A stretch of DNA of 12,317 bases from Trichoplax adhaerens (Eukaryota > Animalia > Placozoa): positions 23,012 to 35,328 of the forward strand of contig NW_002061015.1 of the NCBI RefSeq assembly GCF_000150275.1. The letters run 5' to 3'. Shown piece after piece: positions 1-12,317 of this stretch. The position numbers and the translations under genes are program-made. How positions within the stretch are numbered: the stretch's first letter is position 1; every line of letters begins with the position of its first letter. A model generated the notes under the pieces. The model searched no databases. It had not been told where the DNA came from and saw nothing but the letters and a program-made list of their open reading frames with translations.

Positions 1-1170
1 CTCAGCACTACTCACATACTGTACGTCCTCTGTACTCACAGGTGCATGCCGTATTACTCACAACATGCAGTACAACGAGTAGATCATTTCTTCTTCTTTC
101 TTTGATCTTTTGTGTAAGAATAGCACGGCATGAGATCGCGTTATTGGTAACCCTATCTGGCCCACAGCTTTGGCTGGACTTTGCTTCAATAAATCAAGTC
201 TGATACTGCCATTAGTATACTCTTACTTGATTGAGATGGATTGCATTCAATAATCAACAACAGGATTGGACGGAGCACTGTTGGCAATCGTCTCCACCTG
301 TATTTGTCGGAAAGTACGTACGTTTGTACATCGCAATGATTGAAATGGCTACGATCATGGACTAACTACTGCAGTAGATGGCTACTGAGACAAAAAGAAC
401 GATTGTCTCAGAAACTCCCCTGGTAGTATCTAGCAGACGATAATTGGAGTTGATATTACGAGTAAGCGCCTATTCATTTTACTCAGCCCAGTCCAGCACT
501 GTGCAGTACTGAAGTCGTAATCAGTGTAGCCGACTGATTCGACAGAGGTAAGAAGTCGAACTAAGACGTCTAACCCAGCACAAACCATCGGGGAGTAAAC
601 TATCTACTATCTACCGTTTATGCTAGACGACAATTAAGAATTCATTTATTACTACTTGAAGAGCAGCTGCTTATATATGCAGCATATTCACATTCAATTA
701 CAGCGTTAACGAATTAACATACTGTGGCTCGACTTGAACCAATGATCAATATTCGTTACATCGAAATTGCCGATGATGATGCAAGCCGTACAGTACAGTA
801 CTGGTACATACTGTACCGTATACGAGGTATACAGTAGTATAATAAGCTAGACAAGCTCTTATTTAATTTTTATTCATTGTATCCAAATCACCGATGATCG
901 TGCACACGGAAGTCTGCAAAGAAAATGTCGGTAAGAAAGTAGCTCTTAACATAGAATGCCTTAAACCATTAGCATTCATTGTAGAATATGCAGAGTATAA
1001 TTAGTGCTGTAGAATCGATAGTGTAGATACATTGCTAACTCAAATGATTGTAAAGGCTGATTACAATGAATGAACTTGACAATTCCTACCATGGGGAATG
1101 TAGACGTACGTCGTATAGGAAATGGTAGTCATTGACGCCTAACCATGTCAATAAATAGCATCATTAGCTA

Positions 1171-1341
1171 TACATGTTGTAATATTCTCAGATAGACTCA
1201 AAAACCCGCTTCATTATCCTTATTCTACAATTCTACTCGATCTACGTTAAGCCAATAATTTATTACACAGGTTTGGTTGGTTCTACCCTTGCACCTCGTA
1301 TAGGTAATGTAAACGATGGAACTACTTACTTAGTTGAATCA
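1171..1341 (+). promoter_or_regulatory. Conserved upstream non-coding block of paralog 1 (promoter or non-coding 5' exon candidate)
   Basis: Shares TACATGT, CTCAGATAGACTCA (1187-1200), CCGCTT, TAAACGATrGAACTA (1310-1324) and TTAGTTGAATCA (1330-1341), in the same order, with 7180-7340. Confidence 0.5.
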
Positions 1342-1928
1342 TCACCAGATACTGTAGCATAGAAAGACACTCCATAGCATGTTAGAACCCATATTATGTC
1401 CATGTTATATCCAAAAATAGTGGATATTAGACGTGAGTGATGATTTGTTCAACCATGAAATGAGCTATATCACTCTATTTATTATTGAGCGATAGAGCGT
1501 CTCAAAAACGATAGGATAAAAATTTCAATTTCTTGTCAACTTCATTTGATTAACGTGCGTACAGTACATGAATTCAGTGATTGGACTTGATCCATTCAGT
1601 CCTTCTACCAATTAGTTTATCGAACAGTATAAAATCCTCCAAGAATACAGTAGAAGCTTGTATAATCTTACAATTTGACCTCCAAACGTATTGCATCTTA
1701 AATTAGGGCTATTTTACTGGCATGCAGTATTTTCATTTGTGTATCAATGGATGACTTTCGCTAAGAATGCTAAATGTGTTGTACTTTAGAACAATAATAT
1801 ACTGTACTGTACAGTGATTAAGTAATCCGTAATAATATTAGCTATAGTTGAGTTGAAAATGGACAATGTAATTATTGTAATATATCTCTCTTTAGATTTA
1901 GAATATTACCAACAAGCACAAGTTAAAA

Positions 1929-4064
1929 ATGGAAGATTATTCTATCAATAGCTATGAAATGGCTGTTCAATCTGCGGATAAAATCTCAACAGGTAGAAAC
2001 AATAATATTTTATTGCTAACTAGCTATATTACAAGTACTACATACATATTTTATACCTATAAGTTAACAAAACGAACACATTTTATAACTTTCTACCAAA
2101 TCATTTCATTATTATTAACTATTAACTTTTCCTTTTGTAAAAATGAATTAATTCCAAGATGAGAAATCGACGTTTTCTAAGTTAAGCCGTCGTAAAACAA
2201 TCTATGGAATTATTATTGTACTCGCAACGGCTGTTACTTTTAGTCTTTTTAACCAATTTGGAAAGGTTACAGTCTCAACTGAGAGTAATTTCACTTCGAT
2301 GACTTTCTTTACTTGGTAAGTATAATAATTCTAGTACATTATACCAACGATACATGATACTAGGATAGAATATTGTATTACTAAATATACCCACTGCTAA
2401 ACTTAATGCAGGTGTATACTATTTTCTACATTTAATTTTTCCAGTCTAAAATAACGATAAAATAATAAATATAGTCAATGTCACTCTATTTTGTTTATAG
2501 GATCACATTAAAAATTGAAAGCTTTTTACTAAATCATATACTATATATGATAATTTTACACTCTAATAGTTCTTTCCACTTGTTAACCTTATACGTATTT
2601 ATAAACACTACAATCTCATAATTGTCGGTTGTCACTAAATTGATTTTTACAGTAATAAATTACATGTAGGCTTCGATTCTCATTAAATTTTAATTTCTTA
2701 ATACATTAACCTATGCATAGGGTTTCAGCTTCAACTACCATACTCACTTTTCCAATCCATGCCATATTGTTAATGATTTTTAAGGGTGAAAGCTTACGCC
2801 AAATATATAGGTATCCTTGATAATATATTATATGCCGTATATCTAGTTACCTATTGATTTATTGAACTTACTAGATAAGCGTACCGTAGGTATATTAATC
2901 TTCTATTTTAGCTCTTACAAATGCATCGTGCTAATACTTACCCACACTTACGATAGTATCACTTAGCTAAGAAAATAACTAAACTCTGATTGTTTTTAAT
3001 GTTATTTAGAGAATCAATAAAAATTTGTCCACGCAAAGATATCAAAAAAGTATTTTGGTTACGCTTGTTACCATTAGCCATAAATATGAATATGGTTATC
3101 GTATTAAACTATTACCCTTTAAATTTTACGGCCCCAACCGATGTTACAGCAGTTTTTTCATCGGTACTCGGCATGGTTTATGTGCTATCTATCATATTTT
3201 TGAAAGAGCCATTTATATTGCTTAGGGTAAGTGTTATCATAATTCTAAGACTATGATAGATTTTTAGAGACAGAATTATTATGTATATCTATGAATTAAG
3301 AGTAATGATGTATTTTAATCATGAAGTAAAACATATTATACTCATTCAAAAACAAAAATCGCTTTTAAAATTTTATTAATTTTTAGGCATTCGCAGTATG
3401 CTTATCTACGGCAGGCGTCATATTGTTTGCTTACGACGATGGTTTTGGCTCATTCGCCGCAATAGGCGTCATTTTATCCACATTATTTGCTTTAGCTGCT
3501 GCTTGTTTTCGAGTAAGTTACAAAAATTTGATCATTAATGGATTGCATCTGCAGATATTTATCGTTTATCCTTATTGAAATATAATGTTTATCTACTAAA
3601 CAACTTGTAATATTTATCAGGTTCATACAAAAGTTTTCATTGGTGATGCATCGGCAATTCAAGGGTCAATGCTGTTATCAATTATTAGTGTCCTTAATTT
3701 ATTGTTTGGTTGGATATCTGTTATCATATTTCATTTTGCGGGAATTGAAAATCTTATGTGGTCTGAAGTTCCTTGGGAACCTCTAATGATTACAAATTTA
3801 TTTAATATGTTATATACCGGCTCAGTTATTATTGGAGTCGCCGTTACATATCCTGTATTCATTTCGCTTGGTGCTCTCTTTGGAATACCGATTAATGCAG
3901 TTATTGACGTAATCTTCCGTAATGAATCGTTTTCTGTATTAAAAATATTTAGTACATTGTTATTAGCTTTAGGATTTTTAATTTTATTAATACCTTTGGA
4001 AAAGGCTCAGTGGATATCAAAAATGCCAATTAACTTACTAATGTGTAGACGTCGAAAAACATAA
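1929..4064 (+). CDS. SLC35F3/SLC35F4-like EamA/DMT transporter, paralog 1 (spliced, 6 coding exons, 365 aa)
   Basis: Exons assembled by hand, all GT-AG: 1929-1992, 2159-2315, 2721-2810, 3010-3226, 3387-3512, 3621-4064. Total 1098 nt, open frame ending in TAA; intron phases 1,2,2,0,0. An in-frame TAG lies upstream of the ATG. The protein is multi-TM with motifs FFTWVSASTTILTFP, TAPTDVTAVFS, LSIIFLKEPFILLR, AYDDGF, PWEPL and GVAVTYPVFISLGALFGIPINAVID. These match my recollection of SLC35F3/F4 (FFMTWF..N...FP, TDVSALF, LSWIVL.DRFM.VR, GVVLTYP.LISIG..LSVPGNAAVD). The substrate is not established here. Confidence 0.9.
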
Positions 4065-4219
4065 AAGTCAATACCAGCACTGATGTTTATTCGAAATCGT
4101 TTTAGCAACTTAGCTTAGGAATGTCTCTGCTGACTATGAGGCTTTCCTATAGTAGGCTGAGTGTATATATCGCATTGGCTTTCACTCTCGAATTGTAGTA
4201 CAATTTTATCAGGGAGATA

Positions 4220-4225
4220 AATAAA
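4220..4225 (+). terminator. Putative polyadenylation signal of paralog 1
   Basis: AATAAA ~155 nt after the stop codon. Its context (AATTTTATC..GAGATAAATAAAATA) is homologous to the context at 10610-10641 after paralog 2. Confidence 0.5.
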
Positions 4226-4451
4226 ATAATTCTGATATTTCAACTCGAATGAACTTAATTCACAATACTATAGCTATTGCTATAGATTTCAATAGATATT
4301 TATTTCTATTCATTTATTAGTATTGAGATGAAGTAGTTTTTACCCTGTTTATTGCAGCATTTTATTAATCACTTTAATTTTCATAAGCATATTTTCTATG
4401 TGTGATTAATGAATGTGGCAGACTAGACAGTAGCATTCGCAGGGGTTAATA

Positions 4452-4675
4452 GTTCTAGTGCAGATTTTTCGACCGATTTTCATTCTTATTAATCGACTAG
4501 CGACAATATGTAGATATACACTATGGTACTGTCACAGGTCTCAATTGTAGAGACTAGCAATAAGGGTTGAAAATGTAATTTCAACTGTTATACTGTTACT
4601 AACGACTAATCGAGATTAGTATATAGAGTCGCTAGCCGATCTACTATATTGAAAAATCTCTTCTGTAGTCAGAAC
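4452..4675. repeat. Nested imperfect inverted-repeat element
   Basis: ATCGACTAGCGAC (4492-4504) pairs 12/13 with GTCGCTAGCCGAT (4628-4640). AGATTTTTCGA (4462-4472) pairs with TTGAAAAATCT (4649-4659). GTTCT (4452-4456) pairs with AGAAC (4671-4675). Three internal hairpins lie inside. Confidence 0.55.
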
Positions 4676-5811
4676 CCTAGTAGTATCAGTATAGCCGGTC
4701 TAACTTTTCAAAGCCTCGCACCTCGTGGGGCTACAGTATAGCCAATTATAGGGTGATAACTTACCCAAAGCGTTCCATTCAGGAATTCTCCAAACTCTAG
4801 TCTAATCCTGTTAACTACAAATTCAATTTGGGAAATATCCACAATTATCCTTACATTTTATCTAACACATTTGGTTTAAGATTTTAATCTAAAATATTCG
4901 AAATATATATATATAAGTTTTCCAATCAGGTTACATTCCTATAGCCATCACTAGTGGCAGCTGACGGCAATTTAAGTTATCCTAAAATATTCGTAATCCT
5001 CTTATTCTTATCATGCAATTCTGATAACAAATATTATCATCATAGCACATACTGTACGTATCTATCGTACTTTTTGACCGATACATGCTGTTTAAGTTTT
5101 ACGAGTGTAACGATAAATTTAGGAATTAGGACTATAAAAGATACAAGGCAAATTATCCCGTTATTGCTACTGTCCTGATGATGGTCGCAGTGCTGTATGA
5201 TACGTCGGCAGATAATCATAGAATCTGCTAAACTAGTTTCCAAAATCTATATTCAAGAATCTACTGCTGAATTTCGGAAATACTATCATAATAAAATAAT
5301 GTCTATCCAGGTAGGGTTACAGCGTTAATAATATAAACAATTATTTGATATGACCAATCATTGGTCCTACGGCATGTATTTCCAACAGATTTCGTAATAG
5401 GATAACATAAGAATCTATTAGTTCATTGTTAACCACGACAATTTACTAATAGTTTTATATCATATAATAAGATATTGAGGTAAAGATTATTCACTGAAAA
5501 CTTGTATCATTCAATTTTTAATATTGTAAACAAATTTTGAAAGGCTATTGCCATTGAATATTTAGAAAGGCTATGTTAGTTATTTTAAAGTAAAATAAGT
5601 ACTGTATCAATTATTTCAATGCTGGTTGTATATAAACTGCAGTAAGAGTAACCTATGAAATAATTTCAATTTTAGTTGCAACTTGTTGTTGGCAGAGAAT
5701 CCTCAAAAATTTACCATTCCTCCATCGATTTCTTTTTCCGCTCCGGCAGTCTATGACACTATACTGTACTACTGTACTTGGTACAGTTTAATAGTCATAA
5801 AGATGGCAGTC

Positions 5812-6196
5812 CGTAGCATTGGAAATCTACCCCAGAGAGTCGATTACACTACCTCAGGAGTCTTGTACAATGTAATCTAGTCTTCTACCTTGTATATTGC
5901 TAAATATTTCATTGCGAAAAAATATCTTCTCAAAAATACAACTACTGCAGTTTCTTGCAAACTTCACTTTATTATAGAAGACTAGGTTCGTCTTACAACT
6001 TGGAATATTAGTCGTAAGGTTATTAGGGAATGCTCTACATTCATATTTAGTAATCGACGCTTCTCTTCACTTTTCTTGTATTGAAACTCTGTTCCTGTTA
6101 CTCCTCACTTTATCACTCTGATAGAACTAACACATTACCGGTACATACTGTATTGGATTTTTGCATTGACTTATCCTTTGGATTGTAAAGTGTATG
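5812..6196. repeat. Duplicated non-coding block downstream of paralog 1 (copy A)
   Basis: 5812-5911 aligns with 11266-11362, and 6050-6196 aligns with 11369-11515. Shared strings include AGAGAGTC.ATTACACTA, TTGTACAAT.TAATCTAGTCTTCTA, TTCACTTTTCT.GTATT.AAACTCTGTT and TTGGATTGTAAA.TGTATG. Confidence 0.85.
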
Positions 6197-7179
6197 CCAT
6201 AAATCATGATTGATAACACTTAGAGGAGAAATAACAATATCAAATACGATACGGATCGCTCAGGAAATGTTTCTAAAGTAACTCTTTAATAATACTAGTA
6301 CTTTATTGTATCAACTTCATTAAGCAACCGAAAACGAGAAATACAAACTACAAACTTCATGCTCAAGACAACACCCACAATAGTTGCTTTAACGCATATA
6401 CAGTATATAGAAATCAATTCAAATACAAATATTGAAATAGAAATTATTATAGTAAAAACTCAACTAAACCCTATCAACAAATCATCACGAAGACTCGCTT
6501 CGTCGAGGTGTACCATATTTAATCAATTAAAATTCTTTTCCTCTAAATTCTTGTTGATTACTCTGTTAGAACCAGTATTAGATACTATACCTAAAGTAAT
6601 TTCCAAGCGAAATGCAACGAATATGCAAATCAGTAATGAGTCAGCAAATTATAGCAACATTAACCTAATTATATATGGTTTGGCACTAATAAGTTGATAG
6701 AGATACATAATCTATGCGACTGTACCATATAAATTAACTGGCATCTGACTATAGCTATAGTATAATGATAGGCCTACAGTGCAGCACAGAAGCTGTAATA
6801 TGATAGAAATGACGATTGTATTTTGATACCATTCATTCCTGTTAGTAAAGACTACTAAAGGAGAGAAAACCGGTTTTCCATCTATAGTAGTCCCCGCTAT
6901 TGTTTACGATACTATTTATTGATTATTTTATTGTAGACTGGGTATTTACCACGCGTAGATGCCGGATTACTGCTACGTATAAAATAGTAACAGTAAAAGC
7001 TGACTAGCATTAATTTCCTCTATCGATTTGAAGGTAATTTATGTAGAATTCTAGTTTGATCTGATTGTAGTTGAATTCCGTTTCAAATTTAATGTATAGC
7101 TTAATAAAATAATTTACAGTTCTTGTGTGGCATAACGGTGCAAGTATACTTGCATAATATCATTGCTATTATATACGCG

Positions 7180-7340
7180 TACATGTAGTTACTGTACCCT
7201 CAGATAGACTCAGGTAACCGCTTATCGTTAATTTACAGTTTTGATGATTTCATAGTAAACTAATAATTTCTTGCGTAGGCTTCGTGATTATGCTCGTATC
7301 TGTACGGTTAAACGATAGAACTATCGCTTTAGTTGAATCA
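7180..7340 (+). promoter_or_regulatory. Conserved upstream non-coding block of paralog 2
   Basis: Collinear with 1171-1341: CTCAGATAGACTCA 7199-7212, TAAACGATAGAACTA 7309-7323, TTAGTTGAATCA 7329-7340. Confidence 0.5.
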
Positions 7341-7724
7341 GGAAACGACATAGCGGATTCTAGTATCTTAAAAGCAATGCCATAATGGCTTTTCGATTTC
7401 TTGTTAACTTCACTTGATTGCATGAATTATTCTAAAAGTATAATATCCTCCGCAACTAACGTAAATACTCGTATAATCCTACAATCGAACTTGCTAACAA
7501 AGTCTATTCTTAGGGTTGTGTCACAAATGTATTTACCGTTTTCGCAGCTGACATACACTAAATTATTAATAGATAACTCGAGCTAAGAGTGCCAGATATA
7601 TTCGACTTTATAACTATAATAAGGGTGTAACAATATTAACTGTAATATATTTGACAACTGATGATGTAATTAATATCGAAAATTCGTCTAGATTTAACAT
7701 CGCCAATAAATACACAAGTTAAGA

Positions 7725-10549
7725 ATGGAAAATTGTGTTATTAACAACGAAATAGCTATGAAATCTACAAATTTCTTCTCGACAGGTAGAAACAATTTTA
7801 TACTTTATTGCTAGCCATACTGTAAGTATTTAAGTATATATTATACAACGATAAATTAACATTCATGAAATATTTTACAAAATAGTTATGGAATCTGCAG
7901 ATAACATCTCCCCAGGTAGAAACAATTTTATACTTTATTGCTATCTATACTGCAAGTATTTAAATATATATTATGCAACCAAAAATTAACATTAACGAAA
8001 TATTTTACGAAATAGTTATGGAATCGGCAGATATCGTCTCGACAGGTAGAAACAGTTTTATACTTTATTGCTATCTATACTGCAAGCAATTGAATATTAT
8101 ATATTGCACAACGATAAATTAACATTCATGAAATATTTTACGAAATAGTTATGGAATCTGCGGATAACGACTTGACAGGTAGAAACAATTTTAAACTTTA
8201 TTGCTATCTATACTGTAAGCATTTGAATATATATTATACGACGATATATTAACATTCATGAAATATTTTGCCAAATAGTTATGGAATCTGCGGATAACGT
8301 CTCGACAGGTAGAAACAATTTTATACTTTATTACTATCTATACTGCAAGCATTTGAATATATATTATACATCGATAAATGAACATTCATGATATATTTTG
8401 CCAAATAGTTATGGAATCTGCGGATAACGTCTCGACAGGTAGAAACAATTTTATACTTTATTACTATCTATGCTGCAAGCATTTGAAGATATATTATACA
8501 AAGATAAATTAACATTCATGAAATATTTTACGAAATAGCTATGGGGTCTACGGATAACGTCTCGACAGGTAGAAATAATTTTATACTTTATTACTATCTA
8601 TGCTGCAAGCATTTGAATATATTATACATCGATCAATTAACATTACTGAAACATTTGTATCGTCTATTGAAATGGAAAGATTTATAACATTAACTTTGAG
8701 CTTTTCTTACCCAATTAATTGTACAATATTAGATAGCAAGGCGGAGATATCTGTGCGATCTAAATTTAGTATTCGTAAAACAATCTATGGGATTTTTATC
8801 GTACTCGCAATAGCAATCAGCTTCAGCCTTTTGATTCAATTTGGAAAGATTACAGTCTCAGATGAGCATAATTTTACTTCCATAGCACTCTTTACTTGGT
8901 AAGTAATGTAATTTTAGTATTTATGTATCGTATTAATGTAAGTGGAGGTTATACCGTGCATGTACTCCAAGCTCAGTATACAAGCGAATTTATTCCTTAC
9001 TTTCGATATTTTATAACATAAAACGATAAGATAAAATATGCATCTTTGCTATCTTAATCTACTGATAGAATTAGAATGTAAATCAAAATACTTTTACTGA
9101 TTTATTAATGAAGTAAATATCACTACGTTAAATAAATATTATAACCTTTTCTACAGGATTGCAGCGTCAACTAATTCACTTGCCTTTCCACTACATGCCA
9201 TACTTTTAATGATTTTTAAGGGCGAAAACTTACGCCAGATATACAAGTATACATGATAGCGATCGATATGATAAAAATAGTAATCTATTTACTATACCTT
9301 GTATCTAAATTACATATTGAGTAATTTAGATACAAGGCATAGTACATACTTGATAGACTACCGCATGTATATCATATACTCATTATATTGATAAACTGAC
9401 ACTTATATTTAATCGGTAGAAAGAGAAATCACTAAGCTTAAATTATTTTTAATATAATTGTATTATCTAGAGAATCAATTAAAATTTATCCACGTAAAGA
9501 CTTAAAAAAAATTTTATGGCTTCGATTACTACCATTAGCCATACTTATGAATATAACTGTCGCGTTAAACTATTACCCTCTAAACTTTACGGCTCCAACC
9601 GATATTACGGCTATTTTTTCGTCAGTACTAAGCATGGTCTATATTTTATCGGTCCTATTTTTGAAAGAGCCATTTGTATTACTTAGGGTAAGTATTCTCG
9701 TAGTTCTAAGATTGTAAAAGTAATACATATTTTTAAAGATAGAAATATCATTTAAATTAAGGGCTTTTAATTAAGAGTAATAGTATTTTATTCGTGAGAT
9801 CAAACATGTTATACGGTATCAATTGATAGTAAAAATATCACTTCTAAAATATGATTACTTCTTAGGCGTTAGCAGTATGCCTATCTACGACAGGTGTAGT
9901 ACTGTTCGCTTTTGATGATGGTTTTGGCTCTTTCGCGACCTTGGGTGTTATTCTATCAGTATTCTTTACTCTTACCGCAGCTTGTTTTCGTGTAAGTTAT
10001 AGTAAAATTTATAATTACTTATTAACGAACTTTATATATATGTTACTGCTTATCTTTATTAAAGTGTTACAGTTTAAGTACTGAAAGGTATGTAATATTT
10101 ATTAGGTATACGAAAAGTATTCTATTGGCGATGCATCGCCAATTCAAGCATCGATGCTATTGACAATTATTAGCATTATTAATTTCTTGTTGGGATGGAT
10201 ACCTGTTGTTATATTTCATTATACGGGATTTGAAAAGCTTACATGGTCTGACATTCCTTGGGAACCTCTAATGATTACAGATTTTTGTAATATGTTAAAC
10301 GCCTGCTTTGTTGTTATTGGAGTCGCTGTTACCTATCCTGTATTTATTTCGCTAGGTTCTCTCTTTGGAATACCGATTAACGCAGTTATTGACGCGATCT
10401 TCCGTAACGAATCGTTTTCGGCATTAAAAATAGTGAGCACGCTATTACTTGCTGTAGGATTCTTAATTTTATTAATACCTTTGGAAACGGCTAAATCGAT
10501 ATCTAGAACGCCAATTAAGTTGATAACTTGTAGATATCGAAAAAAATAA
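7725..10549 (+). CDS. SLC35F3/SLC35F4-like EamA/DMT transporter, paralog 2 (6 core exons, 367 aa; up to 427 aa if six micro-exons are included)
   Basis: Core exons, all GT-AG: 7725-7785, 8733-8898, 9157-9246, 9471-9687, 9866-9991, 10106-10549. Total 1104 nt, open frame ending in TAA. Exons 3-6 have the same lengths (90, 217, 126, 444) as paralog 1, and all intron phases match. In-frame TAA codons lie upstream of the ATG. The protein aligns end to end with paralog 1. Confidence 0.9.
7748..8655 (+). repeat. Tandem array of ~7 copies of a 130-bp unit (3' end of exon 1 plus first ~90 nt of intron 1 of paralog 2)
   Basis: CAG|GTAGAA recurs with GT at 7786, 7916, 8046, 8179, 8309, 8439 and 8569 (spacings 130,130,133,130,130,130). 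Units align almost base for base. Paralog 1 has a single copy of the homologous sequence (~1956-2090). Confidence 0.97.
7886..8568 (+). CDS. Six putative 30-nt phase-1 micro-exons of paralog 2
   Basis: Exons at 7886-7915 (VMESADNISP), 8016-8045 (VMESADIVST), 8149-8178 (VMESADNDLT), 8279-8308 (VMESADNVST), 8409-8438 (VMESADNVST) and 8539-8568 (AMGSTDNVST). Each is flanked by AAATAG and GTAGAA, stop-free, and in frame with exon 1 and exon 2. Whether they are spliced cannot be seen from DNA alone. Confidence 0.6.
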
Positions 10550-10631
10550 GAGTTACGATTACTCTTATAAAATCCTGTTTATTGACAATCGCTTTATCGA
10601 GTAATGATAAAATTTATATCTTAGAGATAAA

Positions 10632-10637
10632 AATAAA
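10632..10637 (+). terminator. Putative polyadenylation signal of paralog 2
   Basis: AATAAA ~80 nt after the stop codon, in a context (AATTTATATC..AGAGATAAAAATAAAAATA) conserved with paralog 1. Confidence 0.5.
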
Positions 10638-11265
10638 AATAGTATACATTACAGCTGTAGACAGCCAGTTTGACAATATTCACAATAAAGATTATAGAGT
10701 GTGACAAAGTACTTATTATATCCATCTGATTTCGGTGGTATGATGTAGCTTTTGCAATATTTATGGCAGTATTAAAGATAGACTAGGTTTTATAAAATTT
10801 TGAAGGTTACAGAATAATCTTATCGCAGGTGTAATAACTGCTTCTGTAAAGCTTCTTTTAATTAATAAATACACAAATACACACTCTGTTGTTATTCTTT
10901 CTCTCCCTGTCTCGATAAGCATTTGTCTGGGCTTATGAATTTACAGTTTATTTTACTAGATAGACTTTATTGTTGCTTGTTTATTAGCGATAACATATAG
11001 GGATATAATACGGTACACGTATTCTATTGATTTATTAGTACTAGTAGATCCCGCACTCACAACATTCGCTTGGTGTACTTGTACTTTTTACTTAATAGTA
11101 TGTACTGAAAGTACATGTACACATATCACATACGGACAAAATTATTTTAATATAGTAGATTTATTAATCCTTTCACTAGTTGAAATTATTTCATAAATTT
11201 TATATCACGGGATTGCGATCGATTTCAAAGAGATTGAATCTCGTTTGCAAAACTGATTTGTAACA

Positions 11266-11515
11266 GTAGCACTGGAAGTATACCCTAGAGAGTCAATTAC
11301 ACTAATTCAGTAGTGTTGTACAATATAATCTAGTCTTCTATCTTAGATTACTAAATATTTCAGATTACGTAATCAGTACTTCTATTCACTTTTCTCGTAT
11401 TAAAACTCTGTTACTATTACTCCCTCGCGTTATTACTCTGATACAACCAATACGCATATATTGCATCCTGCGTTGGGCTTGACCTAGACTTACCCCTTGG
11501 ATTGTAAAATGTATG
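11266..11515. repeat. Duplicated non-coding block downstream of paralog 2 (copy B)
   Basis: Direct-repeat partner of 5812-6196, lacking about 130-140 bp (5912-6049) that is present in copy A. Confidence 0.85.
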
Positions 11516-12317
11516 ATTGCCATCAATATATATGAATATTCTTGTGACAAAGATACACCGGAGATATTTCTGGGTATTTCTGGGTCTTCTTCTATCTCGA
11601 CTACTTATCAAGATTAATCACCCGCAATAATTATAAACATTTTCCTTCCGTTTCACGGCAAAAACGCTATAGACCTTCTCCTTAATCATAAACAATAAAA
11701 TAACGAACTTTCATTCACTGTAAAAAGAAACTCATTTTTATACCTTTGTAGTGATTTTAGCTAATTACGGTAGTTTTGTGTACACTACAACCTTCTATTT
11801 ATATTCGTGAGCAGTCATAGAGTATACATATACATGGAATTTAATACTAATAAACGACATGGCTGTCGTATATTCTTAGACCTCATTTTTATTGCTTAAT
11901 ACTCTACTTTAAAATACGTTAGATCACGCATAGAACACGAGAAAGTCATGATTAGAACACGGTCTGACCTTTAAGGTCTCTTTACAAATAAGGTATTTAA
12001 CTAATTCACTTAACCTAACTGGAAAATGAACTAGTTTTACAGTCTATAACCTAACGACAAGTTACCAGTTGTACAACAATCAATGCCACGTATTTATACA
12101 TAATAATGATCTTTAACCCTGTCACGTTCTGTAATAGTTACATAATTAGTATGTTACCTTCTTTCTATATATGGTTAAATATCACGATGTTATCGCGTCA
12201 GGCGTATATAGATGTAGTTATGGTACTATATTAAGGTTATCTATATATGTATTCTCATGTTGCCATACTTGGCATGATAGTCTATTTGTAATGACTAAAC
12301 TAGGGAAACCTTTCTGT

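What the first reader, a model, noticed from the sequence alone, without database searches (positions are those of the whole stretch)
7748..8655. Minisatellite that manufactures a symmetric micro-exon array in a transporter gene
Seen: the 130-bp unit spans the exon1/intron1 junction. Each added copy reads [GTAGAA...100-nt intron...TTAAC...TATTTTrCnAAATAG][30-nt exon ending CAG]. All 7 donors and all 6 TAG acceptors are intact. All six exons are exactly 30 nt, phase 1-1 and stop-free. The only length change among the six new introns (+3, 8046-8148) is intronic. Inference: full inclusion adds a 60-aa acidic, Ser/Thr-rich (VMESADNVST)x6 repeat to the presumably cytosolic N-terminus. Because the exons are symmetric, any subset can be skipped (up to 64 in-frame combinations), which recalls schistosome micro-exon genes but here on an SLC35F transporter. 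Caveats: the acceptors have a poor pyrimidine tract, though true acceptors in these genes are similarly weak (GTACAATATTAG, TTAATTCCAAG). Many substitutions between exons are non-synonymous, so protein-level purifying selection is not evident.
Basis: partly seen in the sequence, partly recalled or inferred. Interest (0 to 1): 0.9.

Follow-up and report, generated by a model that had tools for sequence, protein, structure and literature searches.

The report
Exon-plus-intron minisatellite in placozoan transporter
A 130-base repeat in a Trichoplax transporter gene copies the end of exon 1 plus the start of intron 1 seven times, so each copy looks like a tiny exon with its own small intron; public gene models already read it that way, but I could get no RNA evidence and the sequence shows no sign of selection on the extra peptide.

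Summary
Window 7747-8656 is a 130-bp x 7.0 tandem array (88% matches). It spans the exon 1/intron 1 junction of an intact six-exon EamA/SLC35F-like gene of Trichoplax adhaerens (TRIADDRAFT_62482).

The idea is not new to the databases. The JGI model (XP_002118447.1/B3SDX8) already contains all six micro-exons. The Trichoplax sp. H2 model TrispH2_009867 contains five of them. The H2 annotation used H1 proteins as evidence, so the two models are not independent.

The array arose after the split from single-unit paralogues A and C. Its content differs among three versions: the window, a second H1 contig, and H2. It evolves like a neutral minisatellite:
- the exon-like parts are at least as variable as the intron-like parts;
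- most codon changes are nonsynonymous;
- splice-dinucleotide preservation is not significant (p=0.11).

The acceptors are weak but within the family's real range.

My estimate is about 50% that the micro-exons are at least partly included and 35% that the array is a silent intronic repeat. A selected, MEG-like combinatorial system is unsupported. The scan has flagged similar intron-shaped arrays elsewhere in this genome.

The parts
7747..8656 (+). Minisatellite array, 130-bp unit x 7.0 copies (c1-c7). Each unit is 39 nt of the exon 1 tail plus about 91 nt of the start of intron 1.
   Evidence: TRF; alignment A1; 82-95% pairwise identity between units.
7725..7785 (+). Exon 1 coding part of gene B (TRIADDRAFT_62482). 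ATG at 7725, 20 codons plus 1 nt (phase 1), donor CAG|GTAGAA at 7786. Its last 39 nt form the exonic part of repeat copy 1.
   Evidence: The N-terminus is identical to P0151 and P0157.
7886..7915 (+). Candidate micro-exon 1 (VMESADNISP), 30 nt, phase 1-1.
   Evidence: Present in public models P0151 (H1) and P0157 (H2). Acceptor PWM score 1.35.
8016..8045 (+). Candidate micro-exon 2 (VMESADIVST).
   Evidence: In P0151. No identical unit in the H2 model. Acceptor score 2.42.
8149..8178 (+). Candidate micro-exon 3 (VMESADNDLT).
   Evidence: In P0151. H2 has VMESADNVLT instead. Acceptor score 1.16.
8279..8308 (+). Candidate micro-exon 4 (VMESADNVST).
   Evidence: In P0151 and P0157. Acceptor score 1.60.
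8409..8438 (+). Candidate micro-exon 5 (VMESADNVST). The branch-like TTAAC upstream of it is changed to TGAAC.
   Evidence: Acceptor score 1.79.
8539..8568 (+). Candidate micro-exon 6 (AMGSTDNVST), the last copy. It sits where the ancestral exon 1 tail sat relative to exon 2. Its donor at 8569 is followed by a 164-nt intron.
   Evidence: It has the weakest acceptor (-1.49, below all 44 real ones). It shares the edge-copy states C and A with copy 1.
8569..8732 (+). Ancestral-length intron 1 (164 nt) after the last donor. It ends at the authentic acceptor ..ATATTAG|AT at 8733 and is homologous to the 166-nt intron 1 of paralogue A and the 178-nt intron 1 of paralogue C.
8733..8898 (+). Exon 2 of gene B (DSKAEISV...), first transmembrane segment.
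   Evidence: 100% identical to the C-terminal 55 residues of H2 model P0157.
9157..10549 (+). Exons 3-6 of gene B (9157-9246, 9471-9687, 9866-9991, 10106-10549 including the stop). All introns are GT-AG. The CDS is 367 aa without the micro-exons and 427 aa with them.
   Evidence: 71% identity to paralogue A protein P0155 and to H2 P0002.
1929..4064 (+). Paralogue A (TRIADDRAFT_62481, P0155) with a single copy of the unit. It shows the ancestral state: exon 1 ...MAVQSADKIST, donor CAG|GTAGAA, intron 1 of 166 nt.

Best explanation
This is a young, fast-changing minisatellite in the placozoan Trichoplax adhaerens. It arose from a tandem duplication of 130 bp across the exon 1/intron 1 boundary of an SLC35F-like (EamA) transporter gene.

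Shown:
- Every unit inherits an exact copy of the gene's own donor (CAG|GTAGAA).
- Every unit also inherits an AG that was originally inside exon 1 (codons ..ATA GCT..). That AG lies 30 nt upstream of the donor and in phase.
- On paper, therefore, each unit is a 30-nt symmetric exon plus a 100-nt intron.

Inferred:
- Introns in this gene family are short (67-972 nt), so splice sites are probably paired across each intron.
- I commit to the reading that the 100-nt unit introns are removed at least in part of the transcripts.
- That would add a variable number of 10-residue acidic Ser/Thr-rich blocks to the N-terminal tail.
- I judge the extra peptide and its copy number to be neutral or nearly neutral by-products of minisatellite turnover, not a selected diversity system.
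For: Array and anatomy.

Origin after gene duplication: paralogues A (window 1929-4064) and C (C1412:5920545-) have one unit and introns of 166 and 178 nt. These match the 164 nt left after the last donor.

Turnover: the unit content differs in the window (7 units), in a second H1 contig (at least 4 units, flank 98.1% identical) and in the H2 model (5 micro-exons against 6). Variants are shared between units in a mosaic pattern.

Neutral evolution:
- Exon-like columns are variable at 16/30, intron-like at 39/103 (p=0.15).
- Most codon changes are nonsynonymous.

Splice competence:
- The donors are identical to the authentic one (6.8 bits, 99th percentile of decoy GTs).
- 100-nt introns lie inside the family range of 67-972 nt.
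- The 57-nt AG-free zone before each acceptor is like that of real introns (median about 42 nt).
- A TTAAC sits about 27 nt upstream. This motif is 2.3-fold enriched in the -48 to -8 region of 43 real family introns.
- The authentic acceptor at 8733 is itself weak (2.8 bits).

Two gene-prediction pipelines model the units as exons.

The true exon 1 copy has diverged in its coding part only: 8/30 against 6/103 differences from the consensus (p=0.003), with all six codon changes nonsynonymous. That would be expected if later copies now supply the family-conserved ESAD..ST motif.
Against:
- The candidate acceptors score 1.2-2.4 bits. That is the 9th-14th percentile of real family acceptors and only the 64th-76th percentile of decoy AGs. 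The last one scores -1.5, below every real site.
- One unit has lost the TTAAC.
- The two public models are not independent, because H1 UniProt proteins were MAKER evidence for H2 (PMC6057997). The H1 model is also visibly wrong downstream, jumping from 8568 to 9540.
- No protein in the 5.8-billion-sequence collection other than these two models carries the repeat.
- Preservation of all AG/GT columns is not significant (p=0.11).
Confidence: 0.42

Rival explanations
1. Silent intronic minisatellite. Transcription starts upstream of 7725, donor 7785 is joined directly to acceptor 8733 (a 947-nt intron), and the six extra units are never exons. The protein has 367 aa.
For: The candidate acceptors are weak and purine-rich at -4 to -9, and they score like typical decoy AGs. 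There is no coding constraint on the units. Minisatellites are common in this genome, with three large arrays in 131 kb of paralogue loci, so one landing on a junction is expected somewhere. Introns of 500-970 nt occur in the family. No database protein other than the two linked models carries the repeat.
Against: Six exact copies of the authentic donor would lie inside the intron and compete with the first one. The authentic acceptor is hardly stronger (2.8 bits) than the candidates. The skipped protein would lack the ESAD..ST motif kept in paralogues A, C and H2 P0002, because copy 1 has lost it. Two predictors chose inclusion.
Confidence: 0.35
2. One reading: a selected, MEG-like cassette array whose symmetric micro-exons are combinatorially included to diversify or tune the transporter's N-terminal tail.
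For: All units are symmetric and open in three array versions. An excess of nonsynonymous change is also what diversifying selection would give. Copy number differs between strains and haplotypes.
Against: The pattern is indistinguishable from neutral drift. Variability of exon-like and intron-like parts does not differ significantly, and about 1 junction-spanning duplication in 3 would be symmetric and open by construction. The MEG-defining features are not met (see membership test). There is no expression or isoform data. The tail of a multi-pass transporter is not an obvious target for diversification.
Confidence: 0.08
3. Gene-damaging repeat. The decoy donors and weak acceptors cause intron retention or use of downstream donors. 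This gives transcripts with a premature stop (the reading frame closes 10 codons after donor 7785), or translation from a later in-unit ATG such as 8541. Gene B would then be redundant with its 88-92% identical neighbour C and decaying at its 5' end.
For: Read-through of the first donor hits TAG after 10 codons. Every unit carries an in-frame ATG that could splice to exon 2. Copy 1 shows accelerated, wholly nonsynonymous change. Close paralogues exist.
Against: The other five exons are intact with canonical splice sites, 367 aa. Exon 1 and exon 2 peptides are identical between H1 and H2. The array has persisted since before the H1/H2 split.
Confidence: 0.1
4. Assembly artefact: the array or its copy number is produced by misassembly of Sanger reads in a messy, duplicated region.
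For: The window lies on a 40.9-kb scaffold that is redundant with a gap-filled part of a 9.66-Mb scaffold. The second copy of the array sits on a 1.1-kb contig island flanked by N on both sides, and the island starts at the first base of an array unit. The H2 Illumina assembly could have collapsed a unit.
Against: Units differ by 5-18%, enough to be placed uniquely. Three assemblies or contigs all contain multi-unit arrays with the same structure.
Confidence: 0.03

Closest known systems
Introns and alternative exons born from tandem arrays (Zhuo, Madden, Elela & Chabot 2007, PNAS 104:882, pmid 17210920; listed in the references of PMC3488318; content from my own knowledge, paper not held)
   Same: A minisatellite inside a transcribed gene in which every unit carries both a donor and an acceptor. 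The array itself can therefore be cut into several young introns and small exons, with copy-number variation.
   Different: Here the unit is a copy of an existing exon/intron junction. The donors are true copies of a working donor, and only the acceptor is recruited from exonic sequence. The host is a placozoan with short introns. Splicing has not been shown.
Intron gain by tandem duplication of an exonic proto-splice site AG|GY (mechanism 3 in Lehmann et al. 2010, PMC2891723)
   Same: A local tandem duplication creates a new intron whose size equals the duplication minus the retained exon. It can give in-frame alternative forms when lengths are multiples of three.
   Different: In that model the duplicated segment lies wholly inside an exon and one AGGT supplies both sites. 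Here the segment spans an existing intron boundary, donor and acceptor come from different places 30 nt apart, and the event has been iterated into a 7-unit array.
Schistosome micro-exon genes (MEGs; bioRxiv 10.1101/2023.06.21.545858 and PMC4350168)
   Same: Short symmetric exons that could be skipped in any combination without breaking the frame, and fast, largely nonsynonymous change.
   Different: MEGs encode small secreted proteins built almost entirely of micro-exons (3-81 bp) separated by long introns of up to 5 kb. Here six micro-exons with 100-nt introns would add 60 residues to a 367-aa multi-pass transporter. No isoforms have been shown.
Coding VNTRs whose unit contains whole exons and introns (for example the human LPA kringle IV-2 repeat; my own knowledge, not checked here)
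   Same: Copy-number variation of an exon-plus-intron unit changes protein length in steps between haplotypes.
   Different: Those units are kilobases long with normal exons and proven expression. This unit is 130 bp with a 30-nt exon, and its expression is unknown.

Membership tests
Tandem-array-derived introns / exon-intron minisatellite | Tandem array located inside a transcribed protein-coding gene | tested here: met
   The array at 7747-8656 starts 22 nt after the ATG of an intact six-exon gene and ends inside its first intron.
Tandem-array-derived introns / exon-intron minisatellite | Each unit carries a usable donor and acceptor | tested here: inconclusive
   GT and AG are intact in all 7 + 4 units. 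The donors equal the authentic one (6.8 bits). The acceptors score 1.2-2.4 bits and one scores -1.5, the low tail of 44 real sites. The AG-free zone and the TTAAC are real-like.
Tandem-array-derived introns / exon-intron minisatellite | Units are actually spliced in vivo | not testable with these tools
Only predicted models exist.
Schistosome-type micro-exon gene (MEG) | Coding sequence made mostly of symmetric micro-exons (3-81 bp) | tested here: not met
   The six 30-nt exons are symmetric, but they would supply only 60 of 427 residues. The other exons are 61-444 nt.
Schistosome-type micro-exon gene (MEG) | Small secreted product with a signal peptide | tested here: not met
   The product is a multi-pass EamA/SLC35F-like transporter. 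No signal-peptide prediction was run.
Schistosome-type micro-exon gene (MEG) | Long introns between the micro-exons | tested here: not met
   The unit introns are 100-103 nt.
Intron gain by duplication of an exonic AG|GT proto-splice site | The duplicated segment lies within an exon and one AGGT motif supplies both splice sites | tested here: not met
   The unit contains 39 nt of exon and about 91 nt of the pre-existing intron. The donor is the old donor, and the acceptor is a different AG 30 nt upstream.
EamA / SLC35F-like transporter (drug/metabolite transporter superfamily) | Sequence match to the EamA domain and to named SLC35F proteins | tested here: met
   The gene B protein is 71% identical to P0155 and P0002. 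These match PF00892 EamA at 26.8 and 34.8 bits against a cutoff of 28.2. Sources name the H2 relatives SLC35F4 and SLC35F3. Single exons of B give only sub-threshold EamA and CRT-like hits.

The most novel reading that the evidence does not exclude
The array is a working, length-polymorphic cassette module. All or variable subsets of the 30-nt exons are included, so different Trichoplax haplotypes and strains make transporters whose acidic, phosphorylatable N-terminal tails differ in 10-residue steps. It would be a natural case of a minisatellite directly creating new introns and exons in an early-branching animal, caught while still polymorphic.
Probability: 0.2. Interest if true: 0.7.

Novelty: new member of a known kind. 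Interest (0 to 1): 0.4.

Why it matters
If the units are spliced, this locus is an unusually clean and very young example of how one local duplication can create introns and exons at once. The single-unit ancestral state survives in two neighbouring paralogues. At least three array versions exist in cultured Trichoplax lines, so intron birth, weak-acceptor use and competition among identical donors could be measured directly with existing RNA-seq or a simple RT-PCR. If the units are not spliced, it is an ordinary intronic minisatellite. The practical lesson is then that two public protein models (XP_002118447.1/B3SDX8 and TrispH2_009867) carry an unsupported 50-60-residue repeat.

Tried and rejected
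- Search for RNA-derived ORFs. Searching with P0151 and with the ORF that holds exon 2 found only NCBI/EukProt gene models. No assembly-derived fragment spanned an exon 1/exon 2 junction. This is a blank within the length limits (175-558 aa and 55-175 aa), not evidence of absence.
- Splice-site PWM. I built it from 44 non-redundant family introns found with a home-made spliced aligner. Trichoplax acceptors carry little information, so the score does not separate the hypotheses.
- Tests for selection. Conservation of AG/GT columns (p=0.11) and variability of exon-like against intron-like parts (p=0.15) are not significant. Absence of stops is uninformative.
- Higher-order repeat. The 393-bp period reported by TRF has no better identity (86%) than the 130-bp period (88%), so I dropped it.
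- Literature. No paper on this gene or on Trichoplax SLC35F genes was found. The Zhuo 2007 paper is not held.
- Joined models. Exons were searched by reference. Joins were translated only in local scripts.
One 100-nt unit was typed into a local script for an AG-distance count.
Full report
**What is there.** Tandem Repeats Finder reports one array in the window: 7747-8656, period 130, 7.0 copies, 88% matches, score 1338.
- Exon 1 ends at 7785 with CAG|GTAGAA.
- Six further 30-nt blocks (7886-7915, 8016-8045, 8149-8178, 8279-8308, 8409-8438, 8539-8568) are each preceded by ATAG and followed by the same CAG|GTAGAA.
- The blocks are separated by 100, 100, 103, 100, 100 and 100 nt.
- With the ATG at 7725, exon 1 is 20 codons plus one base. 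Joining all blocks reads through without a stop into exon 2 at 8733. This adds 60 residues with 12 acidic, no basic and 17 Ser/Thr.

**Organism and gene.** The window is G000:C1342:23012-35328, on a 40,902-bp scaffold of a 105.6-Mb, 1414-contig assembly. The last exon retrieves proteins of Trichoplax adhaerens on a 40,902-bp contig.

The gene is TRIADDRAFT_62482 (XP_002118447.1, UniRef B3SDX8), here called gene B. By comparison with its relatives I reconstructed six GT-AG exons: 7725-7785, 8733-8898, 9157-9246, 9471-9687, 9866-9991 and 10106-10549. They give an intact 367-aa protein, or 427 aa with all micro-exons. It is 71% identical to paralogue A (P0155) and to H2 protein P0002. Those proteins match Pfam EamA, and the source names the H2 relatives SLC35F4 and SLC35F3. 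At least 27 loci of this family exist in the genome, mostly in tandem clusters.

- The JGI model P0151 begins with exon 1 followed by exactly the six micro-exon peptides. It then jumps from donor 8568 to an AG inside exon 4 (9540), skipping the intact exons 2 and 3. It is plainly an ab initio product.
- The Trichoplax sp. H2 model TrispH2_009867 (P0157, partial, 125 aa) reads exon 1, five micro-exons, then exon 2.
- Kamm et al. 2018 built the H2 annotation with MAKER, Augustus and GeneMark. The evidence was Trinity/Cufflinks transcripts and also all UniProt entries of T. adhaerens (PMC6057997). The H2 model may therefore simply echo B3SDX8.

Two predictors accept the splice sites, but that is not transcript evidence.

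**Origin.**
- Paralogue A (window 1929-4064) and paralogue C (C1412:5920545-5923059) each have one unit, the same CAG|GTAGAA donor, and first introns of 166 and 178 nt.
- In gene B the stretch from the last donor to the authentic acceptor is 164 nt. The last unit therefore sits in the ancestral position, and the other six were added upstream of it.
- The unit comprises the last 39 nt of exon 1 and about 91 nt of intron.
- The 'acceptor' AG comes from exon 1 codons ..ATA GCT...
- The two edge copies c1 and c7 share states (C at column 10, A at column 21) that the inner copies lack. This is as expected if the first duplication made c1 and c7 and the inner copies expanded later.
- The array postdates the B/C split (88-92% identity). 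It predates the H1/H2 split, because both carry it.

**Turnover.**
- A 1,097-bp contig island inside a gap of scaffold C1412 (5906104-5907200) holds four units plus exon 2. Its unique part is 98.1% identical to the window, while its units are only 82-95% identical to any window unit.
- C1342 is 99.5-99.8% identical to C1412 further downstream, at gene C. The island is therefore probably the other haplotype or a redundant assembly of the same locus.
- The H2 model has five micro-exons. One of them (VMESADNVLT) is found in neither H1 version, whereas the exon 1 and exon 2 peptides are identical.
- Variants are shared between units in a mosaic pattern.

This is ordinary minisatellite behaviour. 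Minisatellites are common here: three large arrays (87 bp x 7.7, 98 bp x 6, 178 bp x 5.6) lie in 131 kb of paralogue loci. An earlier follow-up in this scan (s1-788042) found another intron-like Trichoplax array to be an ordinary minisatellite.

**Is there selection on the units?** No sign of it.
- Among the 11 available units, 16 of 30 exon-like columns vary against 39 of 103 intron-like columns (p=0.15).
- Mean pairwise difference in the window is 0.14-0.18 for the exon-like part and 0.11 for the intron-like part.
- Of the codon differences from the consensus, five are synonymous and the rest nonsynonymous.
- All four AG/GT columns are invariant, but with 55 of 133 columns variable this has a chance probability of 0.11.
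- Openness is uninformative, because only two single-base changes in a unit can make a stop.
- Symmetry follows automatically once the single exonic AG lies a multiple of three from the donor, a chance of about 1 in 3.

One oddity remains. The certainly coding copy c1 differs from the consensus at 8 of 30 exon positions but at only 6 of 103 intron positions (p=0.003). All six codon changes are nonsynonymous, and they turn ESADNV into KSTNFF. Paralogues keep QSADKIST, ESQDKVSI and ESLNKVST. This fits a gene in which later copies now provide the conserved motif. It also fits a tail under no constraint, or one under positive selection.

**Can the units be spliced?** I derived 44 non-redundant real introns of the family by spliced alignment.
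- Donors: the array donors score 6.8-7.5 bits. That is the 23rd-30th percentile of real donors and the 99th-100th percentile of decoy GTs.
- Acceptors: the candidates score 1.2-2.4 bits. That is the 9th-14th percentile of real acceptors and the 64th-76th percentile of decoy AGs. The last candidate scores -1.5, below every real site.
- For comparison, the authentic intron 1 acceptor scores only 2.8 bits, and that of paralogue A only 0.5.
- Trichoplax acceptors carry little information beyond TAG|G.
- Real family introns range from 67 to 972 nt, so 100 nt is normal.
- The array acceptor is preceded by a 57-nt AG-free zone. In 42 of 43 real introns this zone is at least 23 nt, with a median of about 42.
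- A TTAAC lies about 27 nt upstream. This pentamer is 2.3-fold enriched in the -48 to -8 region of real introns. One unit has TGAAC instead.

On balance the units look like weak but plausible introns.

**Mechanism and odds.** If the acceptors were dead, six perfect copies of the authentic donor would sit inside a 947-nt intron and compete with the first donor. Use of any of them without upstream splicing gives a stop 10 codons after 7785. If the acceptors work, every combination is in frame. Proximal sites emerge from the polymerase first, and short introns are usually paired across the intron (general knowledge of intron definition, not tested here). My estimates:
- about 0.50 that micro-exons are included in at least part of the transcripts, of which about 0.08 is the selected, MEG-like version;
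- 0.35 that the array is a silent intronic repeat;
- 0.10 that it damages the gene;
- 0.03 that it is an assembly artefact.

**What could not be done.** The decisive data, spliced reads across the seven junctions, were therefore out of reach. Exons were searched by reference, and joins were translated only locally.

**Comparison with known systems.**
- Closest is the class described by Zhuo et al. 2007 (cited in PMC3488318; content from my own knowledge). There, tandem arrays whose units carry both splice sites create young, alternatively spliced introns.
- It differs from the classical proto-splice-site duplication model (PMC2891723), because the duplicated piece spans an existing intron boundary.
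- It is not a schistosome-type MEG. The product is a multi-pass transporter, only 60 of 427 residues would come from micro-exons, and the introns are 100 nt.

**Verdict.** This is a real structure, correctly described, and already present in public gene models but never discussed in any paper I could find. It is a new member of a known kind. Interest is moderate (0.4) until RNA data decide.

Noticed in passing
window 8568-9543 (model P0151): The public JGI model TRIADDRAFT_62482 splices donor 8568 to an AG at 9540 inside exon 4. It skips exons 2 and 3 and the first 70 nt of exon 4, although all are intact and in frame. The true protein is probably 367 or 427 aa, not 319.
   Followed up: yes
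window 7756-7785: The coding tail of the authentic exon 1 (repeat copy 1) has 8/30 differences from the array consensus against 6/103 in its intron part (p=0.003). All six codon changes are nonsynonymous (ESADNV to KSTNFF). The change is already present in Trichoplax sp. H2.
   Followed up: partly
window 1-12317; G000:C1342, C993, C1412:5896000-5923000: The window's 40.9-kb scaffold is redundant with a largely N-filled stretch of the 9.66-Mb scaffold C1412 (99.5-99.8% identity at gene C). Contig C993 carries the 3' end of a further B-like gene followed by sequence 98-100% identical to window 234-1698. This implies a tandem cluster Z-A-B-C that is poorly assembled.
   Followed up: partly
G000:C1414:8.38-8.42 Mb, C1397:134-162 kb, C1395:1.11-1.13 Mb, C1394:437-455 kb, C1380:157-165 kb: There are at least 27 loci of this EamA/SLC35F-like family in T. 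adhaerens, mostly in tandem clusters. This is a sizeable lineage-specific expansion of a transporter family.
   Followed up: no
P0152 and P0153 (Trichoplax sp. H2 models): Two H2 gene models are fusions of neighbouring paralogues: the 3' part of Z with A, and the last exon of B with C. The H2 contigs appear to break inside gene B.
   Followed up: no
L018:4022-4697, L021:4889-5474, L030:4883-5885: Large, very homogeneous minisatellites (87 bp x 7.7, 98 bp x 6.0, 178 bp x 5.6; 95-97% matches) lie next to other family members. This suggests roughly one such array per 40 kb in these regions.
   Followed up: no
G000:C1412:5545177-5545566: A paralogue 72% identical to gene B in the last exon has one in-frame TAA there, while its likely H2 counterpart (P0002, 366 aa) is intact. 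It may be a pseudogene or a sequencing error in H1.
   Followed up: no
window 7739-7745 and each unit (e.g. 7856-7862): ATTAACA followed by GAAATA occurs both in exon 1 just before the array and near the end of every unit. This short pre-existing direct repeat may have seeded the first duplication.
   Followed up: no
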